A model generated the notes under the pieces. The model was given only the letters and a program-made list of their open reading frames with translations, ran no database searches and was not told the DNA's origin. Positions 20,001-30,790 of a DNA stretch of 64,000 nt are shown here, in pieces; the first letter of the stretch is position 1; each line of letters begins with the position of its first letter. The position numbers and the translations under genes are program-made. Origin of the DNA: Glycera tridactyla (taxonomy: Eukaryota); NCBI GenBank assembly GCA_965644265.1, contig OZ286474.1:59148001-59212000 (forward strand), read 5' to 3'.

Positions 20001-20514
20001 CATAAGCAGGTGGTCTTTATAGAGAGGTGGTCTCTCGGGCAGGGTATGAATAGTATCTTGAATGCTATGAGAGGCTCTTTATGGAATTTGCCGTTGTGGC
20101 AGGTCTTGCAAGTAATCCGTAGAGGGGCCATTCATTTATGAATTATCTCCCAGTGCTGGATTGAGTCAAGTACCTCATGAATATGTCATGACGGATTGTG
20201 AACCTCGTTTCTTTCTTCAATAAGATTTTTTTGAGCGCCTTATCGTGGACATCCATCATTGTGACAGATGTGGATATCAATGGTCGAGTGGTCAGTACTT
20301 GGCAAACCACGTTGGTCGGCTAGCCGCTGGTCATATTGACATTCATAATGGATGATTTTATAATCATCCCCACGTCAGTTGAAATGACAGCACTTCACCA
20401 CACAGTTATGTCCAAACTGTTTTGCTTTTGTTCACCCTTTCAGTATCATATCTGCTTTTCATTGCTACAAGGAAGAGAATATGGGTTGATGGACAGACGG
20501 ATTAACGCAGTGAG

Positions 20515-21000
20515 TGAGTGAGTGAGTGAGTGAGTGAGTGAGTGAGTGAGTGAGTGAGTGAGTGAGTGAGTGAGTGAGTGACTAACGCAGACAGACAGAT
20601 CGACAGACAGTCAGACACAGATAATCTGACGACAGACAGACAAACAGACCGAACGGCAGACAGACAGACAGTTGGACAGACAGATAGATGAATGGGTAGA
20701 CGGTTGGATAGACCTTCGGATAGACGGGTGGACAGATGGATAGATAGACGGATGAATAGATGGATAGATGGTAGAATGAATTAATTAAAGGATAGATAGA
20801 TGTATAGAGGGGTGGATGGATGGATGAATGGATGAATGGATGGACTGATGGATATATCGATGAATGGATGATTAGATAGATGGGAGAATAGATGGTTAGA
20901 TAGATGGATAGATGAGGGAATAGATAGAAGGATGTGTGGATTTGCTGGATGCAGGAATGAATAGATGGGTGGATAGATGGATGGATGGATAGAGGAATAA
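20515..21000. repeat. (GAGT)n followed by (GACA/GATG)n microsatellites
   Basis: Direct inspection. Confidence 0.9.
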
Positions 21001-22340
21001 ATCCATGGATGAACGGATTGGGGAATCGAATAGCCGAGGGGCGAAACAATGGAAATACCATATGGGACATGGAAAACATCTGAAATACACGCGAATGTGC
21101 GGTAGGTATGGAGGTGAAACAATATTGACAATGATGTATGACACCGCAATCACAGCTGCACTTCACTTACAAATCATGTTTTCAGAGGAGTGAAATTGTA
21201 TATGCCCCTCAGCCCTGACACCTCCAACCAATCGCGAGGTGTGTTCTTTGACCTCAAAAGAGCCTTTGACAGCATATACGGTTTCAAACCACAATATGAC
21301 AGCACCGGGTTCCGCATAATGATTTACCAGTGACAAAGAGGGACAGGCGCTGATATATTCAGAACAACGTGTTTCAACGCCTAGACAAATAGGATGTCTT
21401 GTCTTGTGTGTTGTTTTATTCAATTTGCCTTATTGTACACGGAATCATTCGCATTTATTATTACTCCGCTAGTACTAAGGTGGCGCTTTTTTCATGTGAT
21501 GTTTACCCAGCGAGCATGGCCCTGCACTCGATATTGAAGACAAATAGTGAAAACACACACTTGTGTATGAGCCCTCAGCAGACCTACAGCGAACCTCTCT
21601 TCACCTCAACCAATCGTCTTTCTAAACAAAACATTTGAATTCTGTTCCGAAACAAAGTGATATTTCCATATTTCCAAATAGGACCATGGGTATTACATGT
21701 TATTTCACATGTAAGCCAGTGGAGTACAAGATTTGACATGAGTATACTCACACTTGTCTAATCATCTGTCCACTGGATTTTTTCTCCTGATGAGGTCTAT
21801 CAACAATGCGGCACTTGATGGATTGATTAAAGTTCAATAATATGTACTAAGCAGAAGGATTTTTTGTATGCGAGGCAGGTCTCTACCTCAACTGTACCAG
21901 TAATAGCATATCCTTATGGGTTGCACCTTCTGTTTGGTGTAGGTGTGTTGATGTATAGGTGATGCACTTAACGCAATAGTTTCAGTATCACACAGCATGC
22001 AGGCCATTTTTTGAACAAACCACTAACACAATGTACATTCAAGTGTGGCAATTTATTTTGAAATGTGCCTCTAGGCACACCAGGCACAAATGCCGTCCAC
22101 CAACCGTACCTAGGGCACATTCAAAAATTACTAGACCGAAGTCGGATGAAGGTCACTTCAGCCCCTTGTGAAAGCGACCAGCAGAGGTCTATAGACCTAC
22201 TAATTAGCCTAATCGAATTTGGAGAAATTCTTGATCCTTCTAATTAAAAATTCACCCATTGCAAATGGGTACAAGATTAGGCTAATGCACTTAACTACCT
22301 TAATGAATATCCGAGGATGCTAATATAATTTTCATAACAA

Positions 22341-22346
22341 TTTATT
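22341..22346 (-). terminator. Candidate poly(A) signal AATAAA of the YR retrotransposon transcript
   Basis: About 220 nt after the YR stop codon, 4 nt beyond the terminal motif at 22351-22360, followed by U-rich sequence. Confidence 0.5.
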
Positions 22347-22562
22347 CAGTAGTGGGATACACAAAAACATTCATACACAATTCGCGTTACAAAAATTCGT
22401 GTAGTCAGGTCGTGCCTTTGGCTTGCATAATAGTGACCTTCGTTGACGCTTGAAAAGAGGCACCGTCATGGTCAGCACTTCGTCACTTGAAAAGAGCACT
22501 TGTATTTGGGATCATGAAAAGAAGCAGCTGCCAGCTGACCCCCTTGCGAAGCCAGCTGGGCC

Positions 22563-23540
22563 TTACAGACGGACTGCCTGAGGCCTTACATAAGACCTAA
22601 AGGCTGACGAATTCCATCGACCCTTTTGACGAATTTGCTCATCAGAAAACCCTTCACAAACCCAATCACTGCACCTACCTATTCGAAAAGAGTGACTTGA
22701 CAAATGGTGCCTCCTTCCAAGCGTCAGATCGCCTATCTTCTTCAACCAATCGTTCACAAACCGGGGAGATACCGGCTGACCTTCTCTGAGAAACAGTGGG
22801 CCTGGAATCAAAGATCTTACTTTCAAATACCTCTCCATATTTAATACAGGACATGCGAAATCATGAGGAATACTGTTTAGGATGAATTGTCTAGACCCTT
22901 TGGAAAACTTGTAAGACCTTATGGTAAGCTTGAAAGCCTTGGTAACTCCGTAAGTCGTAGCTCGTTGTAAGTCATCCAACTGGATGCAGTGATCATTAGC
23001 ATTTGATTTAGTATATTCCAAAACCCTCAAGCAAGCGGCGTAGGCCCATGAAAACATAGTACATAGCAATATACCGTCATACGAGTACCCTAAAAGATTG
23101 AAGGTGCATTCCAGCATTTTTAACAGAACCGATTTGGAAACTGGAGAGCGAAAATCGCATGATTTCCTGTTCTTCACAATGCCCCCTATCATTCTAGTAA
23201 CCAAGTAATGTTTGCATGAATCTCCCAAATCTCTAACTTTCAAACCATGAGATAAAGCAGAAAGTTTGGATTTTATGGTCGTGGCTTTTAACCCTGTGGA
23301 ATACAGGTATGCTACGTATAGGCATACCGAGGCATGTGAAAAATCGATGCCTTCCGACTTTACAAAAGCAGAAAAGTCATCCCAAACCTTGGAATAGGAC
23401 TTAGCAGTAGACTTCGCAAAAGACTCGTCTACCAACTCTTTCACCAGATTGCCGAGGTCCTGGGATCGTAGGCTTCCGGAATAGCCACCGGGTGTATCGC
23501 TAACCCCGCTTGTCTGCATTGCTCCTGTGAAAATTGGCAT
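22563..23540 (-). CDS. Tyrosine recombinase (phage-integrase family) of the retrotransposon
   Basis: 325 aa with LRVLE (catalytic R), SHSFRIG (H-x-x-R) and GRWNSSAFRSY (W/Y nucleophile region). N-terminal SAM-like region (STAKSY..W..F). Overlaps the end of the RNase H ORF. Confidence 0.93.
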   Translation of the reverse strand: MPIFTGAMQTSGVSDTPGGYSGSLRSQDLGNLVKELVDESFAKSTAKSYSKVWDDFSAFVKSEGIDFSHASVCLYVAYLYSTGLKATTIKSKLSALSHGLKVRDLGDSCKHYLVTRMIGGIVKNRKSCDFRSPVSKSVLLKMLECTFNLLGYSYDGILLCTMFSWAYAACLRVLEYTKSNANDHCIQLDDLQRATTYGVTKAFKLTIRSYKFSKGSRQFILNSIPHDFACPVLNMERYLKVRSLIPGPLFLREGQPVSPRFVNDWLKKIGDLTLGRRHHLSSHSFRIGRCSDWVCEGFSDEQIRQKGRWNSSAFRSYVRPQAVRL

Positions 23541-25222
23541 CTTGAAATCTTATCTGGGATCAAATTGTCCTCTCCTGGGACATGTATGGCCTCAAATTCG
23601 ATATCATTGAGTAGGGAAAATAACATTACATGCCTCATGAGGCGCATGAGGTCCTCATTTCGTGCAGATCGTTTATTGATAACCTCGACGACCGCCATGT
23701 TATCGCAGAAAAACAGCACTTTTCTATGCCTCAGAGCTAGACGAAAAACAACCAGAGCTGTCAGAATAGGGAAAAATTCAAGGTATGCTATATTCTTCTG
23801 ACACCAATCCCCTTGATACTGTAGGTAATACCACAAATTGCGAAAAACCACACCTGCGCCGTTCTTACATGCGTCAGAATGAATGTGCTCCGGTGCCTGC
23901 CGGCGCAACGTGATATCTTTGAGAAAAGAGTAACCGTTATACTCTGAAAGGAAAGATTGCCACATAATCAGATCCTTTTCTAACTGAAGGGAAAAACAAA
24001 CTAAATGAGAGGTGTCAGTGAGGCCTAAGGTTGCGTCTATGAGGCCTCTGGTGAAGGATTTCCCTGCTGGTATAAGGGAGGTACACCAACTCAATTTACC
24101 TATAAGTGATCTGAGCACTCCGAACAAACATTGTTTAGCATGGAGGATGTCCGACACTTGCTTCAAATATTTCTCAAGCTTGTCAGCCGGCACTCTGGCG
24201 AAACCCTGCCGTACGTCTATCTCAATTCCCAGGAATGTAATTTTCTGTTTCGGATTTTCCGTTTTACGAGGACACAACGGTATTCCAGCTTTCAAGCAAA
24301 AATCCTGGAAAGCTGTTAAATCCTGTAGGCATTTATCGTAGCCATCTGCTACGAAGCAGAAGTCGTCTAGCATGTGTGAGGCGTGTGTAATGCCCAATTT
24401 GTTTTGACAGACCCACTGAAGCGCCGTAGCAAATCTCTCGAAGATCCTGCAGGAGGACCTCCCTCCCATTGCTAAGCATCTGTTTATGTAAAATTCATGT
24501 CCCAGCCTAAGTCCCATGAGGTGGAACTGATCAGGTTTGATGGGAATAATTCTAAAAGCGGATTTAATATCCGTCTTACTAAGATATGCCGTTTTGCCTA
24601 TCGATATCACAAAACCTATGACTGTTTGAACCGAAGCGTACTTCACAGAAGCAGCGGAATCTGGGATATGATAGTTCACAGACAATGAGTTGTACGGCGC
24701 GGAGAGGTTATGTATGAGGCGAAACTTTCCTACTTCGCGCTTCGGGACTATCGAAAGAGGGGATACTTGGATATTATTAAACGGCGGTTCTGCAAAAGGA
24801 CCTACAATCCTTCCTAGTTCTATTTCCTCCGCTATTAGAATCTTGGTTTCCTTAAAATGTTCCTGAACTGAAGGAGAATTCCTGCCCCTATAGGCAGGTG
24901 AAATTCCTTGAAAACCTATGCAAAAACCGTTACTGAAACCATCGATTAGGTAATCAACCTCACCTGCATCATAGCTGTACAACTCATGTCTGAGAAATTG
25001 GTGATTTACTGGTGTCGCCACCTCCTGAAGCCTTTTTCTTATTGCCGAGCTGAGGTGATCCTCCGCTATTTGACCTGCACATATACAAAGGGTGAGAACC
25101 AGCGCAAGTTGGACACGTGTGCTTAAAGGAACAGCTGGGGAACAGACATCTTTTACCCTGAGCATGGTAAAAATTGCAATATCCCTTTTTAATACGTGGT
25201 CCTGACTGCTTCCCTGTATCAT
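23441..25222 (-). CDS. Reverse transcriptase - RNase H (DIRS type)
   Basis: 593 aa with SPLSIVPK, KFRLIHNLS, KTDIKSAFR, CLAMG and MLDDF (RT), and SDAC, IAYLEFFP, FCDNMAVV and HVPGEDNLIPDKISR (RNase H). No methyltransferase domain follows. Confidence 0.95.
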   Translation of the reverse strand: MIQGSSQDHVLKRDIAIFTMLRVKDVCSPAVPLSTRVQLALVLTLCICAGQIAEDHLSSAIRKRLQEVATPVNHQFLRHELYSYDAGEVDYLIDGFSNGFCIGFQGISPAYRGRNSPSVQEHFKETKILIAEEIELGRIVGPFAEPPFNNIQVSPLSIVPKREVGKFRLIHNLSAPYNSLSVNYHIPDSAASVKYASVQTVIGFVISIGKTAYLSKTDIKSAFRIIPIKPDQFHLMGLRLGHEFYINRCLAMGGRSSCRIFERFATALQWVCQNKLGITHASHMLDDFCFVADGYDKCLQDLTAFQDFCLKAGIPLCPRKTENPKQKITFLGIEIDVRQGFARVPADKLEKYLKQVSDILHAKQCLFGVLRSLIGKLSWCTSLIPAGKSFTRGLIDATLGLTDTSHLVCFSLQLEKDLIMWQSFLSEYNGYSFLKDITLRRQAPEHIHSDACKNGAGVVFRNLWYYLQYQGDWCQKNIAYLEFFPILTALVVFRLALRHRKVLFFCDNMAVVEVINKRSARNEDLMRLMRHVMLFSLLNDIEFEAIHVPGEDNLIPDKISRCQFSQEQCRQAGLAIHPVAIPEAYDPRTSAIW

Positions 25223-26942
25223 TCTTGCCTGGGTTGAAACTGCCTGCTTTTAAAGCCTTCTGATGAAGCACGAGGTGAAAAGTTGACCAGGGAAACGGCT
25301 TCACCATTTGGGAACGGAGTACTCTGAAATTCCTGTCATAGAACATGAAATTACCACCGTTATTGTCCAATTCCCTTATCTCATGAACATAAATGAGTAG
25401 GTCGCAACCTTCCCTCGCTCGTTGTTGAGCATTTTTGAAGGGGTGAGCGTTGTAGATAGCCTGAAAGACTAGAAATGCCTGTTCCCACTCTGAAATAGAT
25501 CTAATGGACTTTTTCTTTTTAGAGAGAACGAACTCCCCAGATTTCCCATCTACTTTATAGTGCTTATTCAATAGTTCTGTCGGCTGTAAAAGCTCTTCTA
25601 ACTCAATATATTTGTCCTGCCATATTGATATTCGGGTGTCTAAGTCCACATTGAACCCTATTGGTAGACCCGCCGAAATTATATTTCGAGGGCTTGGATC
25701 ACACAATATATCCGATTCATTTATCGATCTGAAATCAGGAAGACTACGGAAAGGAGACAATGCCGTACATTCATCAGCACTATCTCCTGTATCTCTGATC
25801 CCTTGTAGTCTGGCACCGTCTGCTAAGCGAGCCGTGCCATGATCGTCATGGCTGGCTACACCCCGCCGTAACAAATTCAACCTGTGGTACATGGACATGT
25901 CAATTTCATCATCGCCTGCCGTGACGGTAAGCGGAGGCACACTATGCGGGTCAGAACTGACTGCCGCGAACACATTGTTTGGGTTGAAATTGACACGGCC
26001 ACCCTCACCACGGGTTGAAGACAAACGCCCCGCATGTAAACTATTGTTGTTGTGACCTAAGCCTAACCGTTCGTCTCTGTCATTGAAGTTAAGTCTCGTT
26101 GTCTGTCCGTCCGCCGTCCCTGCCGTCTGTCTTGTTTGATTCGAACTGCCTGTAAAATTAATACTGTGGCACACTGGCCTGCTACGGCCACTGTACTGTC
26201 TTTCATCTTTATCCGAACTACCTAAGACTGTGTTCGACATGAAGAGTAAACGGTCGTTACCTTGCAAAGAATGTCCGCCGTTACTTTGTGAGGCAGCTTC
26301 TGTCGGTCGCCCTCCGATGCCAGTCCCAGTACCGAGACCGTCGATTCTGGCCTGCATGCTCAGCATGATGTTGGACAAGTCCGAAATCTGCCGTGTTGCC
26401 ATTGCTATGGTTGATCTGAAGTCTGACCTGAGTTCGTTTATCGCAGCCAGCCTGGTTGTATCGCCGTGCTCCGACACGTGGTCGTTACTTGCAGAGCCTG
26501 TCGCTCCTAGGGTACTTCCGCTATTCCGCATGCGCAAATCACACGGCACCGGAGAAGGCGACCCACCAATGCCTCCTCCTACGTGCCTATTTCAAATATT
26601 GCAAGCATTGTCTGATGAACGTTGTAACCTATCCAAACGTTGGCCCAGACCACCGTTTCGGGGTTCACAGACTGAACCCTCAACGTTCATAGGGTGACAA
26701 TTGCCAACTGAATTGGGAGGCGGTTGACCACACGGGATTTGACTTCCAAATCCGAAAGCACCCACCTGAGCAGGGCCAGACGCCCTCGAATCCGTGCCGT
26801 TCAGCAAATCCGAAAATGGATCACGACCGCTCCCATTACATGTCAGCGGCCTAAAATCCTCGTCACCCGATGGTCCTCCCAGCGCTGCCGGCTTCCTTTT
26901 CGCGCCGTTACCATTGTCTTCCAAAATGCTCCTTTTCGCCAT
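24984..26942 (-). CDS. Gag-like ORF (~652 codons) with one in-frame TGA at 26592-26594
   Basis: Track ORFs 26592-26942 and 24984-26549 are in the same frame, separated by a single TGA (..ACNI*NRHVGGGIGGSPSPV..). The C-terminus has the DIRS gag motifs EWEQAFLVF and YDRNFR and a Cys/His finger, CNFYH..C..PSCSFKHTCPTCAGSHPLYMC. Confidence 0.85.
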
Positions 26943-27094
26943 CTGTAATCATGATTTTTATCCCAGAACAGTATTTTGTCACAATATGTCACTGAATGTC
27001 CGTCACAACAACCATAGAAAATTATAAATTAGCTGTTAACCTCTAACAACAACAAAGAAAAACAACAACAATAACGTATCCCACTTTCAACTGT

Positions 27095-27847
27095 CTAGAA
27101 CAACGGATTGAGCCCTCGAACCACTCTGCCGAGTCCTGGTACACAGTCCAGCACTGCCTGCCTGAGTTCAAGACGATATTTCCTTGAATAACGTGAGTTT
27201 GGTTTTGGATGAATACCATCCCTACTCCACCTTAGAATGGTTCGAGGAGCAATGTCCAACAATGATCCAAACCCTCTGGTATCATGATAAACCAAACCCG
27301 GCATATGCAGACAGCAGTTTTCCACTTGTGCATTAAATACACGAGCCCTAGGCCTGAAGGCCACAGGCGAAACGAGCCTGTCCAGGCAAGACATGATGTC
27401 AATCATTTTGATGTCATGCTGCGTACGCAGGTTTACAGCTATCTCACATAAGTCTACTGCCAAAGTCCGTGGATCATTGTTGGGTTTCACCAAATCATTG
27501 GACCCTAAGTCCAAAACCACTACATCAGGGACTAATTCGCTAGCGAAGCCTAACTCCTCCAAAATCCCGTGATTGTCTGGATAGTCCTTCAGAAAAGTGC
27601 AAGACCTCAAGTGAACGGCCTGGAATGTATCTGAAAGATTCAGTAGCCTAGCGTACACCTCTGCTCTAGTCATGTTCCCCACCTCTATCTCATGTCCAAA
27701 CCTCCCTTCCTGGATGATAGTATCCAAGTCGTCCTTCTGGTGTTGAACAAAAGAATGTCCCAAAATTAGTCCTACCGGTTTCCGACCTAACCATTGTTCT
27801 ATTGGAACATACGGCGACTTCGCCTGCCAATGCGCCATGCCTATCAT
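27095..27847 (-). CDS. SGNH/GDSL hydrolase (esterase-like), 250 aa from the first ATG
   Basis: Block I GHSF, block III LDLGSND and block V DGIH are present, so the catalytic S, D and H are intact. Confidence 0.85.
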   Translation of the reverse strand: MIGMAHWQAKSPYVPIEQWLGRKPVGLILGHSFVQHQKDDLDTIIQEGRFGHEIEVGNMTRAEVYARLLNLSDTFQAVHLRSCTFLKDYPDNHGILEELGFASELVPDVVVLDLGSNDLVKPNNDPRTLAVDLCEIAVNLRTQHDIKMIDIMSCLDRLVSPVAFRPRARVFNAQVENCCLHMPGLVYHDTRGFGSLLDIAPRTILRWSRDGIHPKPNSRYSRKYRLELRQAVLDCVPGLGRVVRGLNPLF

Positions 27848-27899
27848 TGAAATGGGAGACCCGAAACAGAACAAAGGCTACCTTAGAACGGTCAGTTGA

Positions 27900-27936
27900 A
27901 AGTGGGCCGAGGCCACGTGTGTTCACGCCTTTTATA
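27900..27936 (-). promoter_or_regulatory. TATA box and initiator-like start of the retrotransposon transcript
   Basis: TATAAAA at 27936-27930, CACGTG in between, and a YYANWYY match (CCACTTT) with the A at 27903. Confidence 0.55.
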
Positions 27937-29074
27937 CCTGCTATCAACACGCCCTCTAACAGATCTATATATGAGCAGAAAAATTCAGAATTAGCATTCA
28001 AGTATAACAAATACAAGGTCATGATACTATAAAGAGCTGTGTCTGTCCGAACCTAAAAACTAAATTATATTTATGAAATGAACGGCGTATTCCTGTAATA
28101 GCGTGACATCTGTAGGAAAGCGCCGTGTCATTCCTCAAAAATTACTTCCTATCCTGGCCATCCAAAAAACTCATTTATTCAGCAATAAATTAATATTATT
28201 CTACTTTTGAAAGTTTGCAGTTCCGACCTTCACAGACCCCACCTTCACAAAACCTGAATGCAAAATGATGAGGAACCATAGAGGTTGTCAAGTGGAAGGT
28301 GCTGGAAAATCAGACACACCTCGATGATATCATCATGATTTCTGTGACTTTTAAGGAGAATGGTGAATATTTTGTGAGATACAGGTCTTACTAGAACTAT
28401 CCATTTTTTACGAGTATGCTGCATGGAGTCTTTTGAATGTTGCCGCAGTCCCGAAGTGAACCATTTAAACATGTTGCAGTAAAAAAAAAAAGAGCGTGTC
28501 TGTTAGCAATTATTCCCACTACAAGATGGTATGGGGGATGATGACACAAGCATGCGTGATGAATACATGCTACGATGAGTACCACGTGAGTTTCATCATG
28601 AAAGAAATACATAATGCGGCGGAACCTGTAGTAAACAACCACTTTCTTAGGCGATCACTTTCTGGTTTCCTGATGGAGTAATTCTCACTATGATATTTGT
28701 GTGATAGGCAGCCAGCTGTCTTCAGCAACCAGTTGTTTTGGTTTCCCAAGAGTGTCTTCTTGATACATAGAAACACCTGAAATTGTGAGCTCGGCCCAAC
28801 CACCCTCAAGATCACCATTCCTACCACAGTCAACCGCAGCAGCAGCAGCAGCAGCAACATCAGCAGCAGTATCATCACCACTAGAAGGCAGGTATCAATG
28901 TCAAAGCGTCTCAAAATCCGTTCTGGTGCCCAGGAATGAACCTAATGTCACATGCAATTACATGGACATCATGATAACGCCGACCGCATGAATACTACAT
29001 GAAACAATTTTCCATCTTGTTCCCTGAATTTTATGCCATTCTCGTTCTAATACAATGATAACAAAGACAACAAC

Positions 29075-29347
29075 AACAACAACAACAACAGCGATGATGA
29101 CGACGACGACGACGACGACTGCTACTACCATTACCCTTGCTACAGCTTCTGTTGCTATTACTGCAACTACTGCTACTGCTATTGCAACTACTGCTACTAC
29201 TATTACAACTACTGCTACTACTATTGCAACTTTTGCTGCTCCTATTACTGCTACTACTGCTACTACTGCGGTGACCACCACCACCATCCCTCACCACTAC
29301 CAGTACCGGTAGCACCAACAATACCGTCAATGCTACTGCTGCTGCTG

Positions 29348-29378
<31 letters not shown>

Positions 29379-29416
29379 ATTTACTTTTACTTCACTGCTA
29401 CTGCTGCTACTACTAT

Positions 29417-29460
<44 letters not shown>

Positions 29461-29510
29461 GTAGTAGTAGATGTAGTAGTGGTAGTAGTATTACTGCTGA
29501 TTCTAATACC
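29075..29510. repeat. (ACA/ACG/ACT/GCT)n trinucleotide field
   Basis: Direct inspection; it explains the poly-T/V/S ORFs. Confidence 0.9.
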
Positions 29511-30790
29511 ACTACCACTGAAATGCATCTCCACTGATTCTAGACTTTCAATATGATAGAGAGTGGCAGTAGGGCAAAGATTGATATCTGGATTAGTGTC
29601 TGATGAATTTGATATAAGCGGTTGAGGAGTTCTTAATAAACCTGCCATTGGCGCAGCTGCTTCACAGTTGTACTATTAAACCTCACATGTGTATGAACAA
29701 TTATGGGATAACGACGCCGGTCACGTGACCACCGGTATGGACACACAAACTGACCAGCACGCTGGACACACAACTGACCACGTGCGTCATTCATGAGTTT
29801 ACACTGGACAATTATTTACTTTTTCACCTCACTGATTGACCTGTAATGAAGCTTGATGAGGAGGGGAATTAGAGAGGGTTGTGAAGCTGATGTATGCATG
29901 CGGCCAACTTTGCTGGGTGTCAGGGTGGAAGCAAGGTAAGACCTCCTACAGAGGCAGATGTTGACCAAGGCGCACGAAAATGAATGAAAAAAAAACACCA
30001 TGGAGAAATCAAACCTCACCCAACTCACATTTTATTCTACATTATCCCCCCCCCCCGTATTGTCTGTCTGACTGCCTGTCCAGTTGTCTGCCTGCCTGCC
30101 TGCCTGTCGCCCCATCCTCAATCCTTCTCGCACTTTCCGTCATTTGTGTTTTGTCTTCCCCATACTCACAATCCTCCTCCCCTTCCCTGGTTCTACCCCC
30201 CCCCCATTGTACCCATCCTCCGTGCTGTAACCTGCATCCTGCATCCTCCATCCTCCATCCTCCGGGGAAAGTGAAAAATACGGTCCCCTGTTTTCGAGCA
30301 CCTGTCGAATGTAAGAAAACGGTCCTATAGTTACTATTTATTGATAAATATGTCAGCAATGTGTTTCTATCAATATAATTCCTATTAGGTGACGACGAAG
30401 TGTAGCATCTTTCCATAAAATTAATATTTTCTGTCTTTCCAACTGATTTAAAAGCCGTATCAAAAGGGGAAAAATCCCCCGGGGATAGCCTGTCATGACA
30501 AGAGTGTAGCATCATTTGTTTCTACTTTGATTTCCAACAAAAACGAACTCAACCTCCAAAACAATCAATATTCAACAATAAAATCAACTAATTTCGCTAA
30601 TCAAATACCTGATTTGACTTGTCTGGTCGTTTTAGTGACTAAAAATCGCTAATAAATGTGTCACAAGCACCTGCTTCGTGGTGGCTGCCATTTTTGTTGT
30701 GAGCGTATTAATACGACAGTTGCCTGTGATGAGGCCAGAAGCGCTCCACCAGTGCAGTCCCACAGCAGGTACTACTTCATATGTTTTAAC

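What the first reader, a model, noticed from the sequence alone, without database searches (positions are those of the whole stretch)
22351..27906. YR retrotransposon with no terminal repeats but an internal 18-nt complement of its own circle junction
Seen: right end R = CAGTTGAAAGTGGG (27893-27906), left end L = AGTGGGATAC (22351-22360), internal M = GTATCCCACTTTCAACTG (27076-27093). The reverse complement of M (CAGTTGAA-AGTGGG-ATAC) is exactly R joined to L through the shared 6-bp core AGTGGG, i.e. the junction of a circle closed between the ends. R sits at the predicted transcription start, L abuts the AATAAA, and M lies 1 nt after the SGNH stop. Established: DIRS1-type elements use an internal complementary region near the 3' end together with ITRs; Ngaro elements use split direct repeats; YR crossover cores are 6-8 bp. 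Inference: a distinct end architecture in which a 5'-proximal splint aligns both ends of the RNA or cDNA for circularisation, with YR integration at AGTGGG.
Basis: partly seen in the sequence, partly recalled or inferred. Interest (0 to 1): 0.88.

Follow-up and report, generated by a model that had tools for sequence, protein, structure and literature searches.

The report
Ngaro retrotransposon with conserved leader helix

Summary
At least ten sibling copies (86-94% identical) share sequence from window 21859 to 28200, with unrelated flanks beyond. That is about 490 bp past L and 294 bp past R.

Six siblings carry a 1,042-bp short unit after the coding unit, giving the split direct repeats (A1-int-B1-A2-x-B2) of Ngaro elements. 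The window copy has only A-int-B, which is why it seemed to lack terminal repeats. Insertion junctions overlap by ATT/NTT in a T-run, not at AGTGGG. No genomic copy carries the predicted L/R junction.

M, however, is real. R and M form a 14-bp complement that encloses the SGNH gene. It is kept through three compensatory double changes in two diverged families here. It recurs with three unrelated sequences at the same positions in relatives from other assemblies. M-L pairing is weak: one compensatory change and no counterpart elsewhere.

My best reading is an RNA-level helix that ties the predicted transcript 5' end to the gag leader. A role in priming or strand transfer is inferred, not shown.

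The parts
21859..28200 (-). Whole element copy (6,342 bp), a single 'long unit' A-int-B without the 3' short unit
   Evidence: Limits of homology with at least 10 sibling copies whose flanks are unrelated. No second copy of A or B anywhere in the window.
27883..28200 (-). Repeat A (5' split direct repeat, 318 bp), carrying TATA, initiator and R
   Evidence: Repeated as A2 in the short unit of L002, L003, L005, L006, L009 and L010.
27928..27936 (-). TATAAAAGG box, 33 nt upstream of the A of CCACTTT
   Evidence: Sequence. Conserved in all families of this genome. Promoter function is inferred.
27893..27906 (-). R: sense CCCACTTTCAACTG, the 5' arm of the conserved helix. It ends 10 nt before the end of repeat A and overlaps an initiator-like motif.
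   Evidence: Invariant in about 30 copies. Covaries with M in families C17 and C10.
27095..27847 (-). SGNH/GDSL hydrolase ORF (first in-frame ATG at 27847, stop at 27095-27097)
   Evidence: PF13472, E 4e-7. Homologous to ORF1 of L043 and L046, E 4e-16 and 4e-22. ATG.
27076..27093 (-). M: sense CAGTTGAAAGTGGGATAC, the 3' arm of the helix. It starts 1 nt after the SGNH stop and lies 133 nt before the gag ATG.
   Evidence: R-M is the closing helix in both the MFE and centroid fold of the 5' 867 nt.
24984..26948 (-). gag-like frame (ATG at 26942), interrupted in this copy by one in-frame stop at 26592-26594
   Evidence: Several siblings have an uninterrupted frame of 652-654 aa. No Pfam hit.
23441..25249 (-). 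Reverse transcriptase / RNase H frame
   Evidence: PF00078, E 3e-11, and PF13456. 141 homologues at 33-52% identity.
22563..23549 (-). Tyrosine recombinase frame
   Evidence: E 2e-32 to the L047 protein that carries PF00589. C-terminal HSFRIGR...GRW...Y motif. Weak SAM-like N-domain hits.
21859..22544 (-). Repeat B (3' split direct repeat, 686 bp), carrying L, UGUA motifs and AATAAA
   Evidence: Repeated as B2 in the short units of sibling copies.
22351..22360 (-). L: sense GTATCCCACT, 185 nt inside repeat B and 4 nt before AATAAA (22341-22346). It shares CCCACT with R.
   Evidence: CCCACT before AATAAA is conserved in this genome's families. It has no counterpart in other species.

Best explanation
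The stretch is a minus-strand copy of a Ngaro-type (split-direct-repeat) tyrosine-recombinase retrotransposon. Its gene order is A - SGNH - gag - RT/RNase H - YR - B, and its DNA ends are at window 28200 (5') and 21859 (3').

Complete family members continue with a short unit A2 - x (41 nt) - B2. The window copy lacks it, most simply through recombination between B1 and B2. Integration is by YR crossover in a 3-nt ATT/NTT overlap inside the T-run that forms the B|A circle junction.

M is not a complement of the DNA circle junction. It is the 3' arm of a conserved long-range helix whose 5' arm is R, and the helix closes off the leader plus the whole SGNH ORF. This brings the 5' end of the RNA next to the gag leader.

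Shown: the anatomy, the repeats, the ends, and the conservation and covariation of R-M.

Inferred: that the pairing acts in the sense RNA, and that it serves replication. I put about 0.4 on a replication role. That could be the 5' end used as a Tf1-like self-primer on M, or capture of the 5' end for strand transfer. A translational role, letting ribosomes bypass SGNH to reach gag, is the main alternative at about 0.3.
For: Ends and repeats:
- Searches give 11 near-full copies collinear over 21859-28200.
- One search shows alignment breaking at those two points, with unrelated flanks.
- Searches show the short unit A-x-B in six copies. One search shows intra-copy repeats identical at 683 of 685 positions, while copies differ from each other by 6-13%.
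- One search finds no second A or B in the window.
- One search shows ATT at both junctions in most insertions.
- One search finds the L/R junction pattern nowhere in the genome.

Domains.

The same architecture (SDRs with a spacer, SGNH before gag) appears in other assemblies.

R-M helix:
- It is invariant in the main family.
- Compensatory changes occur at R8/M7 in C17 and at R7/M8 and R11/M4 in C10. Chance is about 0.07 and 0.03 respectively.
- Three of the one-sided changes give G.U in the sense strand.
- Unrelated 13-, 11- and 11-bp complements sit at the same two positions in L043/44, L046 and L053/54, with 0, 0 and 1 of 300 shuffles reaching them.
- L046 adds a second helix across an asymmetric internal loop.
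- R-M closes the domain in both the MFE and the centroid fold.

Literature:
- Ngaro is defined by SDRs, lacks a methyltransferase, and sometimes has an SGNH ORF (PMC9210276).
- DIRS ends carry trinucleotides (PMC7192593, PMC9210276).
- The minus-strand primer of DIRS-order elements is unknown (PMC7192593).
- Hairpin self-priming has been postulated for DIRS (PMC3601003).
Against: - No RNA data: the transcription start at R and the poly(A) site after L rest only on TATA, initiator and AATAAA motifs.
- The helix was not detectable in six more distant relatives (L042, L047, L049, L050, L051, L055), so it is a feature of a subclade.
- Simple self-priming at M would give daughter circles of one long unit without x-B2. 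Yet the short unit is co-inherited with near-identical repeats. Priming at M therefore cannot be the whole story.
- R overlaps the core promoter and M abuts a stop codon, so part of their conservation could have other causes.
- Each diverged family is represented by one or two decayed copies.
Confidence: 0.7

Rival explanations
1. The element runs from R to L without terminal repeats. M is a splint complementary to the circle junction of RNA or cDNA, and the YR integrates at the core AGTGGG.
For: The arithmetic of the three motifs is exact. M-L keeps 9-10 bp in five families of this genome, with one compensatory change: M A>T paired with L T>A. R is at the predicted start and L lies beside AATAAA.
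Against: Every full copy extends 294 bp beyond R and 490 bp beyond L, to common ends with unrelated flanks. Split direct repeats are present in six copies. Junction overlaps are ATT/NTT. No L/R junction exists in the genome. L has no analogue in other species although R-M does. A circle closed at L/R would lose the promoter.
Confidence: 0.04
2. The R-M helix is real and acts in RNA, but in translation rather than replication. It closes off the SGNH ORF so that ribosomes shunt or reinitiate to reach gag, in the manner of the pararetrovirus leader hairpin.
For: M sits within -2 to +20 nt of the ORF1 stop in every version. The helix encloses exactly the leader plus ORF1. gag lies downstream of a 750-nt ORF and needs some way to be translated.
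Against: In this genome R lies at the predicted cap-proximal end, leaving no room for ribosome loading upstream of the helix. No short upstream ORF of the kind shunting uses is present. There is no expression data.
Confidence: 0.3
3. R and M are DNA-level inverted repeats. They would be binding sites for the YR or another protein, or relic terminal inverted repeats of a cassette that brought in the SGNH gene. In that case the two copies co-vary because one protein reads both.
For: The inverted repeats flank one gene precisely. Co-variation of two inverted copies is also what protein-recognised repeats show.
Against: The SGNH segment is never inverted or missing in any copy. There is no target-site duplication around it. 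One-sided changes are mostly G.U in the sense strand. L046 continues the pairing across an asymmetric internal loop, which fits a folded strand and not two identical sites. R also occurs in the short unit without any partner.
Confidence: 0.1
4. There is no pairing function. R is conserved as a core promoter, M as context of the stop codon and gag leader, and the complementarity is coincidence.
For: 17% of shuffles contain some 14-mer inverted repeat. R overlaps an initiator-like motif.
Against: Three compensatory double changes. Three further unrelated complementary pairs sit at the same positions in other assemblies, at 0-1 of 300 shuffles each.
Confidence: 0.04

Closest known systems
Ngaro elements (order DIRS), e.g. 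zebrafish DrNgaro and Xenopus DIRS-53_XT, as described in PMC9210276
   Same: RT/RNase H plus tyrosine recombinase. Split direct repeats A1 ... B1 A2 B2 that are near-identical within a copy. No methyltransferase. An extra SGNH hydrolase ORF. Overlapping frames.
   Different: The SGNH ORF lies before gag, directly behind repeat A, instead of after the YR. A spacer x (41 nt here, 41-355 nt in relatives) with a C-rich box separates A2 from B2. A covarying helix brackets the SGNH ORF. I found no mention of such a helix in the papers I read.
DIRS-1 internal complementary region (ICR)
   Same: An internal sequence complementary to two other parts of the element. The ICR is essential for completing retrotransposition after first-strand synthesis (PMC7192593).
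   Different: The DIRS-1 ICR (88 nt) is complementary to the outer DNA termini of inverted repeats and sits near the 3' end. M (14-18 nt) is complementary to internal sites at the predicted transcript ends and sits 5'-proximal. The element has direct, not inverted, repeats. In SDR elements the B1|A2 junction already supplies the circle-junction template.
Self-priming of Tf1/chromovirus-type LTR retrotransposons (cited in PMC3601003)
   Same: A sequence just upstream of gag is complementary to the first 11-14 nt of the predicted transcript.
   Different: Here about 800 nt, including a whole ORF, lie in the loop. Cleavage and priming are untested. The element has no LTRs and no DDE integrase.
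Pararetrovirus leader hairpin used for ribosome shunting (from my own knowledge of CaMV)
   Same: Long-range pairing closes off several hundred nucleotides between the 5' end and the first essential ORF.
   Different: The enclosed region here is a conserved protein-coding gene. No short upstream ORF is evident.

Membership tests
Ngaro-like YR retrotransposons | Reverse transcriptase with RNase H, plus a tyrosine recombinase in place of a DDE integrase | tested here: met
   PF00078 and PF13456 on 23441-25222. The YR frame matches the PF00589-bearing L047 protein at E 2e-32 and has the HxxR...W...Y tail.
Ngaro-like YR retrotransposons | Split direct repeats A1 - internal - B1 A2 B2, with the internal repeats downstream of the YR | tested here: met
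   Met for the family: six sibling copies have A-int-B-A-x-B. Also met in relatives L042, L047, L049 and L050. The window copy itself has only A-int-B.
Ngaro-like YR retrotransposons | No methyltransferase domain | tested here: met
   No such Pfam hit in any of the five frames at E up to 0.01.
Ngaro-like YR retrotransposons | RT and YR fall inside the Ngaro clade in a phylogeny with reference elements | not tested
   No named reference Ngaro, DIRS or PAT sequences were obtainable through the tools. Homologues returned carry no family names.
DIRS1-like elements | Inverted terminal repeats | tested here: not met
   No inverted repeat joins the two ends. The ends are direct-repeat parts A and B.
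DIRS1-like elements | ICR complementary to the outer DNA termini | tested here: not met
   M is complementary to sites 294 and 490 bp inside the true ends.
Tf1-type self-priming retroelements (mechanism, not family) | A primer-binding site complementary to the first nucleotides of the transcript | tested here: inconclusive
   Complementarity to the predicted start is present and covaries. The start itself is only predicted from TATA and initiator motifs, and no RNA run was available.
Tf1-type self-priming retroelements (mechanism, not family) | RNase H cleavage of the 5' end and its extension as primer | not testable with these tools
   This needs analysis of cDNA 5' ends.

The most novel reading that the evidence does not exclude
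The R-M helix is the long-sought minus-strand initiation device of a clade of Ngaro elements. The capped 5' end of the RNA folds back over the SGNH gene onto M and, after RNase H cleavage, primes cDNA synthesis. This would make it a self-priming site in a tyrosine-recombinase retrotransposon.
Probability: 0.2. Interest if true: 0.75.

Novelty: new variant of a known kind. Interest (0 to 1): 0.5.

Why it matters
How DIRS-order retrotransposons start and complete reverse transcription is still open. The primer is unknown, and only the DIRS-1 ICR has been tested experimentally (PMC7192593).

A short helix that covaries across families and species is a concrete, mutable candidate cis-element for that process, or for expressing gag behind an upstream gene. 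It sits between the predicted transcript start and the gag leader.

The case also shows that a copy which has lost its 3' short unit can pass for a 'repeat-less' YR element. Termini therefore need to be set from several copies.

Tried and rejected
- **L/R junction search.** A genome-wide pattern search for the predicted L/R junction in sense context found only the M sites.
- **RNA evidence.** The only run found was a low-coverage DNA run holding 8% of the words. Laying it showed scattered contigs and nothing about starts, ends or joints.
- **SGNH homologue search.** The search with the SGNH protein gave nothing at E 1e-8. The tool is word-limited, so this says little.
- **R-M helix in more distant relatives.** Nothing rose above shuffles in L042, L047, L049, L050, L051 or L055, whether by exact, G.U-tolerant or duplex-energy scans.
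- **Splicing of the SGNH region.** I considered a donor near AAG|GTAGCC and an acceptor at the TAG before M. I rejected it because families with a TGA stop have no AG there, and the A|x boundary does not fit a splice.
- **Spacer x as an exon or hairpin.** An ORF crosses it, but the ORF starts upstream of the predicted transcription start. The short-unit RNA folds no better than shuffles, z +0.9.
- **Spacer x as a piece of the internal region.** Only the last 10 nt recur at the int|B boundary.
Full report
**1. The observation**

R, CAGTTGAAAGTGGG, is at 27893-27906. L, AGTGGGATAC, is at 22351-22360. M, GTATCCCACTTTCAACTG, is at 27076-27093. The reverse complement of M is R joined to L over AGTGGG.

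The coding strand is the minus strand. Its frames are:
- a GDSL/SGNH hydrolase (27847-27095; PF13472);
- a gag-like frame (26948-24984) with no Pfam hit;
- RT with an RNase H-like part (25249-23441; PF00078, PF13456);
- a tyrosine recombinase (23549-22563).

The recombinase frame aligns at E 2e-32 with a relative that carries PF00589. It ends in HSFRIGR...GRW...Y.

On the sense strand, R reads CCCACTTTCAACTG. It lies about 30 nt after TATAAAAGG and contains an initiator-like CCACTTT. M starts 1 nt after the SGNH stop. L reads GTATCCCACT and lies 4 nt before AATAAA.

In one copy the coincidence is modest. 17% of shuffles hold some 14-mer inverted repeat, while the L 10-mer appears in 11 of 2000 shuffles.

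**2. The true ends and the repeats**

A search of the window's own genome returned 11 near-full copies (86-94% identical) that are collinear from window 21859 to about 28200. It also returned many fragments and diverged families.

Aligning the borders of ten copies shows homology stopping at exactly these two points, with unrelated flanks. R and L are therefore 294 and 490 bp inside the element.

Six copies (L002, L003, L005, L006, L009, L010) carry an extra 1,042-bp unit 3' of the coding unit on the sense strand. It consists of the 318-bp block 27883-28200 (A), a conserved 41-nt spacer x, and the 686-bp block 21859-22544 (B). On the sense strand this reads A1-int-B1-A2-x-B2, the split direct repeats that define Ngaro and PAT elements (PMC9210276, PMC4157794).

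Within a copy the repeated parts are almost identical (683 of 685 positions), while copies differ from each other by 6-13%. The two units of a copy are therefore inherited together. One locus has three short units in tandem.

The window copy and three others consist of A-int-B only, and no second A or B exists in the window. Recombination between B1 and B2 would produce this form. That route is an inference.

The B|A junction in tandem copies reads ...TTAATATTTTTTGTATGC... Insertion borders keep TTAAT-ATT on one side and, mostly, ATT-TTTTG on the other. This is a 3-nt ATT/NTT overlap with no target duplication. It agrees with the trinucleotide ends reported for DIRS-order elements (PMC7192593, PMC9210276).

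No place in the genome carries the L/R junction in sense context.

**3. M is nevertheless not noise**

R and M are invariant in about 30 aligned copies, and in families only about 70% identical overall.

In more diverged families of this genome the two arms change together:
- Family C17 has R8 T>C with M7 A>G.
- Family C10 (65% identical) has R7 T>C with M8 A>G, and R11 A>G with M4 T>C. It keeps 11 consecutive pairs that begin directly after its TGA stop.

A simple permutation gives about 0.07 and 0.03 for these by chance. Three further one-sided changes give G.U in the sense strand.

Relatives fetched from other assemblies (RT 37-50% identical) all have the hydrolase ORF before gag. Several show the same A1...B1-A2-x-B2 layout.

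In three of these families a leader motif is complementary to a motif at the ORF1 stop, and the sequences are unrelated to ours:
- L043/44: TCGGTCTTGATTC with GAATCAAGACCGA, 13 bp, overlapping the stop, 0 of 300 shuffles.
- L046: ACACTCGGGCT with AGCCCGAGTGT, 11 bp, 0 of 300 shuffles. A second 7-bp helix follows across an asymmetric loop.
- L053/54: ATACTGAAATT with AATTTCAGTAT, 11 bp, starting right after TAG, 1 of 300 shuffles.

ORF1 of L043 and L046 is homologous to the window's hydrolase. In L046, as here, R lies 10-14 nt before the end of repeat A.

Folding the RNA from R to just past M puts R-M as the closing helix in both the MFE and the centroid structure.

Six more distant relatives show nothing above shuffles. 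L045 has M-like and R-like arms as a local hairpin after ORF1, but its 5' end is missing from the contig. The helix is therefore a feature of a subclade.

**4. M-L**

CCCACT a few nucleotides before AATAAA is conserved in this genome's families. Pairing with M keeps 9-10 bp in five of them, with one compensatory change: main family M ..GGGATAC with L GTATCCC..; other families M ..GGGATT. with L .AATCCC... In C29 and C10 only 6-7 bp remain.

No counterpart exists in the other species, even where R-M is clear. The flank of L also carries UGUA motifs typical of poly(A) sites. I treat M-L as possible but unproven.

**5. Mechanism**

Shown: the anatomy, the ends, the repeats and the covarying R-M complementarity.

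Inferred from TATA, initiator and AATAAA motifs: transcripts start at R, and they end either after L in B1 (mRNA) or, by read-through, after L in B2. Only the read-through RNA contains the promoter-bearing region between the poly(A) site and the start.

Inferred from the literature on SDR elements: cDNA is closed into a circle carrying the B|A junction, and the YR crosses it with a T-rich target.

For R-M, the G.U pattern and the looped second helix favour pairing in the sense RNA. Its geometry matches the self-priming site of Tf1-type elements: the 5' end of the RNA pairs with a site just upstream of gag. Hairpin priming has been postulated for DIRS (PMC3601003), and the primer is unknown (PMC7192593).

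A caveat applies. Priming only at M, with transfer to the tail of A2, would give circles of one long unit. That matches copies like this window's, but it does not transmit x-B2, which is evidently co-inherited. M therefore cannot be the sole initiation site, or additional template switches are needed.

A translational role is the main alternative, in which ribosomes bypass the hydrolase ORF to reach gag. DNA-level inverted repeats are less likely: the segment is never inverted or lost, and R also stands alone in the short unit.

**6. Comparison and novelty**

By its defining features the family is Ngaro-like. It has RT/RNase H plus a YR, split direct repeats, no methyltransferase and an SGNH ORF. 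I did not run a phylogeny with named references.

It differs from described SGNH-bearing Ngaro elements in three ways. The hydrolase ORF lies before gag rather than after the YR (PMC9210276). A spacer separates A2 from B2. A helix brackets the hydrolase ORF.

It is not DIRS1-like, because it has no inverted terminal repeats and no ICR complementary to its termini.

What remains is a new, testable cis-element in a known kind of element.

**7. State of this copy**

The gag frame of the window copy has one in-frame stop, at 26592-26594. Several siblings have all four frames open. I built no consensus and repaired no frame.

An earlier scan note on the same stretch (s1-322478) read the promoter and poly(A) signal as lying outside the unit, in a possible docking site. 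The sibling copies show that both belong to the element's own A and B repeats.

Noticed in passing
L002:1147-1187 (spacer x). Also L038:8111-8135, L042:10353-10393, L046:120-173, L047:11453-11807, L049:10311-10373, L050:10542-10602: The spacer between A2 and B2 of the short unit always begins, directly after the end of A, with a C-rich box of the form CCNCCNCCNCCCC. This holds across families and species, although the rest of the spacer varies from 41 to 355 nt. It sits where a minus-strand primer site would sit, but no partner sequence was found.
   Followed up: partly
window 22540-22560 (int|B boundary) and L002:1140-1160 (x|B boundary): A purine run (sense CAAGGGGGTC) lies exactly at the start of repeat B in both the long and the short unit, and it is duplicated by 8 nt in the short unit. 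It resembles a polypurine tract that would define the start of B.
   Followed up: no
L006:1-1506, L029, L030 (G000:C11:13728691-13730780): Three identical short units (A-x-B) stand in tandem 3' of one long unit. This could come from unequal crossing-over or from repeated template switching.
   Followed up: no
L045:960-1030: In the closest foreign relative (RT 49% identical), an M-like arm and an R-like arm form a local hairpin right after the ORF1 stop. The contig lacks the 5' leader, so a long-range partner could not be checked.
   Followed up: partly
L053 (metagenome scaffold, 6,914 bp) and L046: L053 is circularly permuted (gag-RT-YR-B-A-SGNH-gag). L046 reads as [short unit][long unit], the opposite order to this genome. 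These could reflect tandem copies, circles or assembly paths through repeats.
   Followed up: no
window 20500-21040 and 28830-29520: Long (AGTG)n and (GATG/GACA)n microsatellites lie 0.8 kb from one end of the element. Trinucleotide (CAG, CTA) repeat tracts with imperfect palindromes lie 0.6 kb from the other end.
   Followed up: no
window 27269-27282 and 27470-27483: A second exact 14-mer inverted repeat (sense CCAACAATGATCCA and its complement) lies inside the SGNH ORF. Its conservation was not checked.
   Followed up: no
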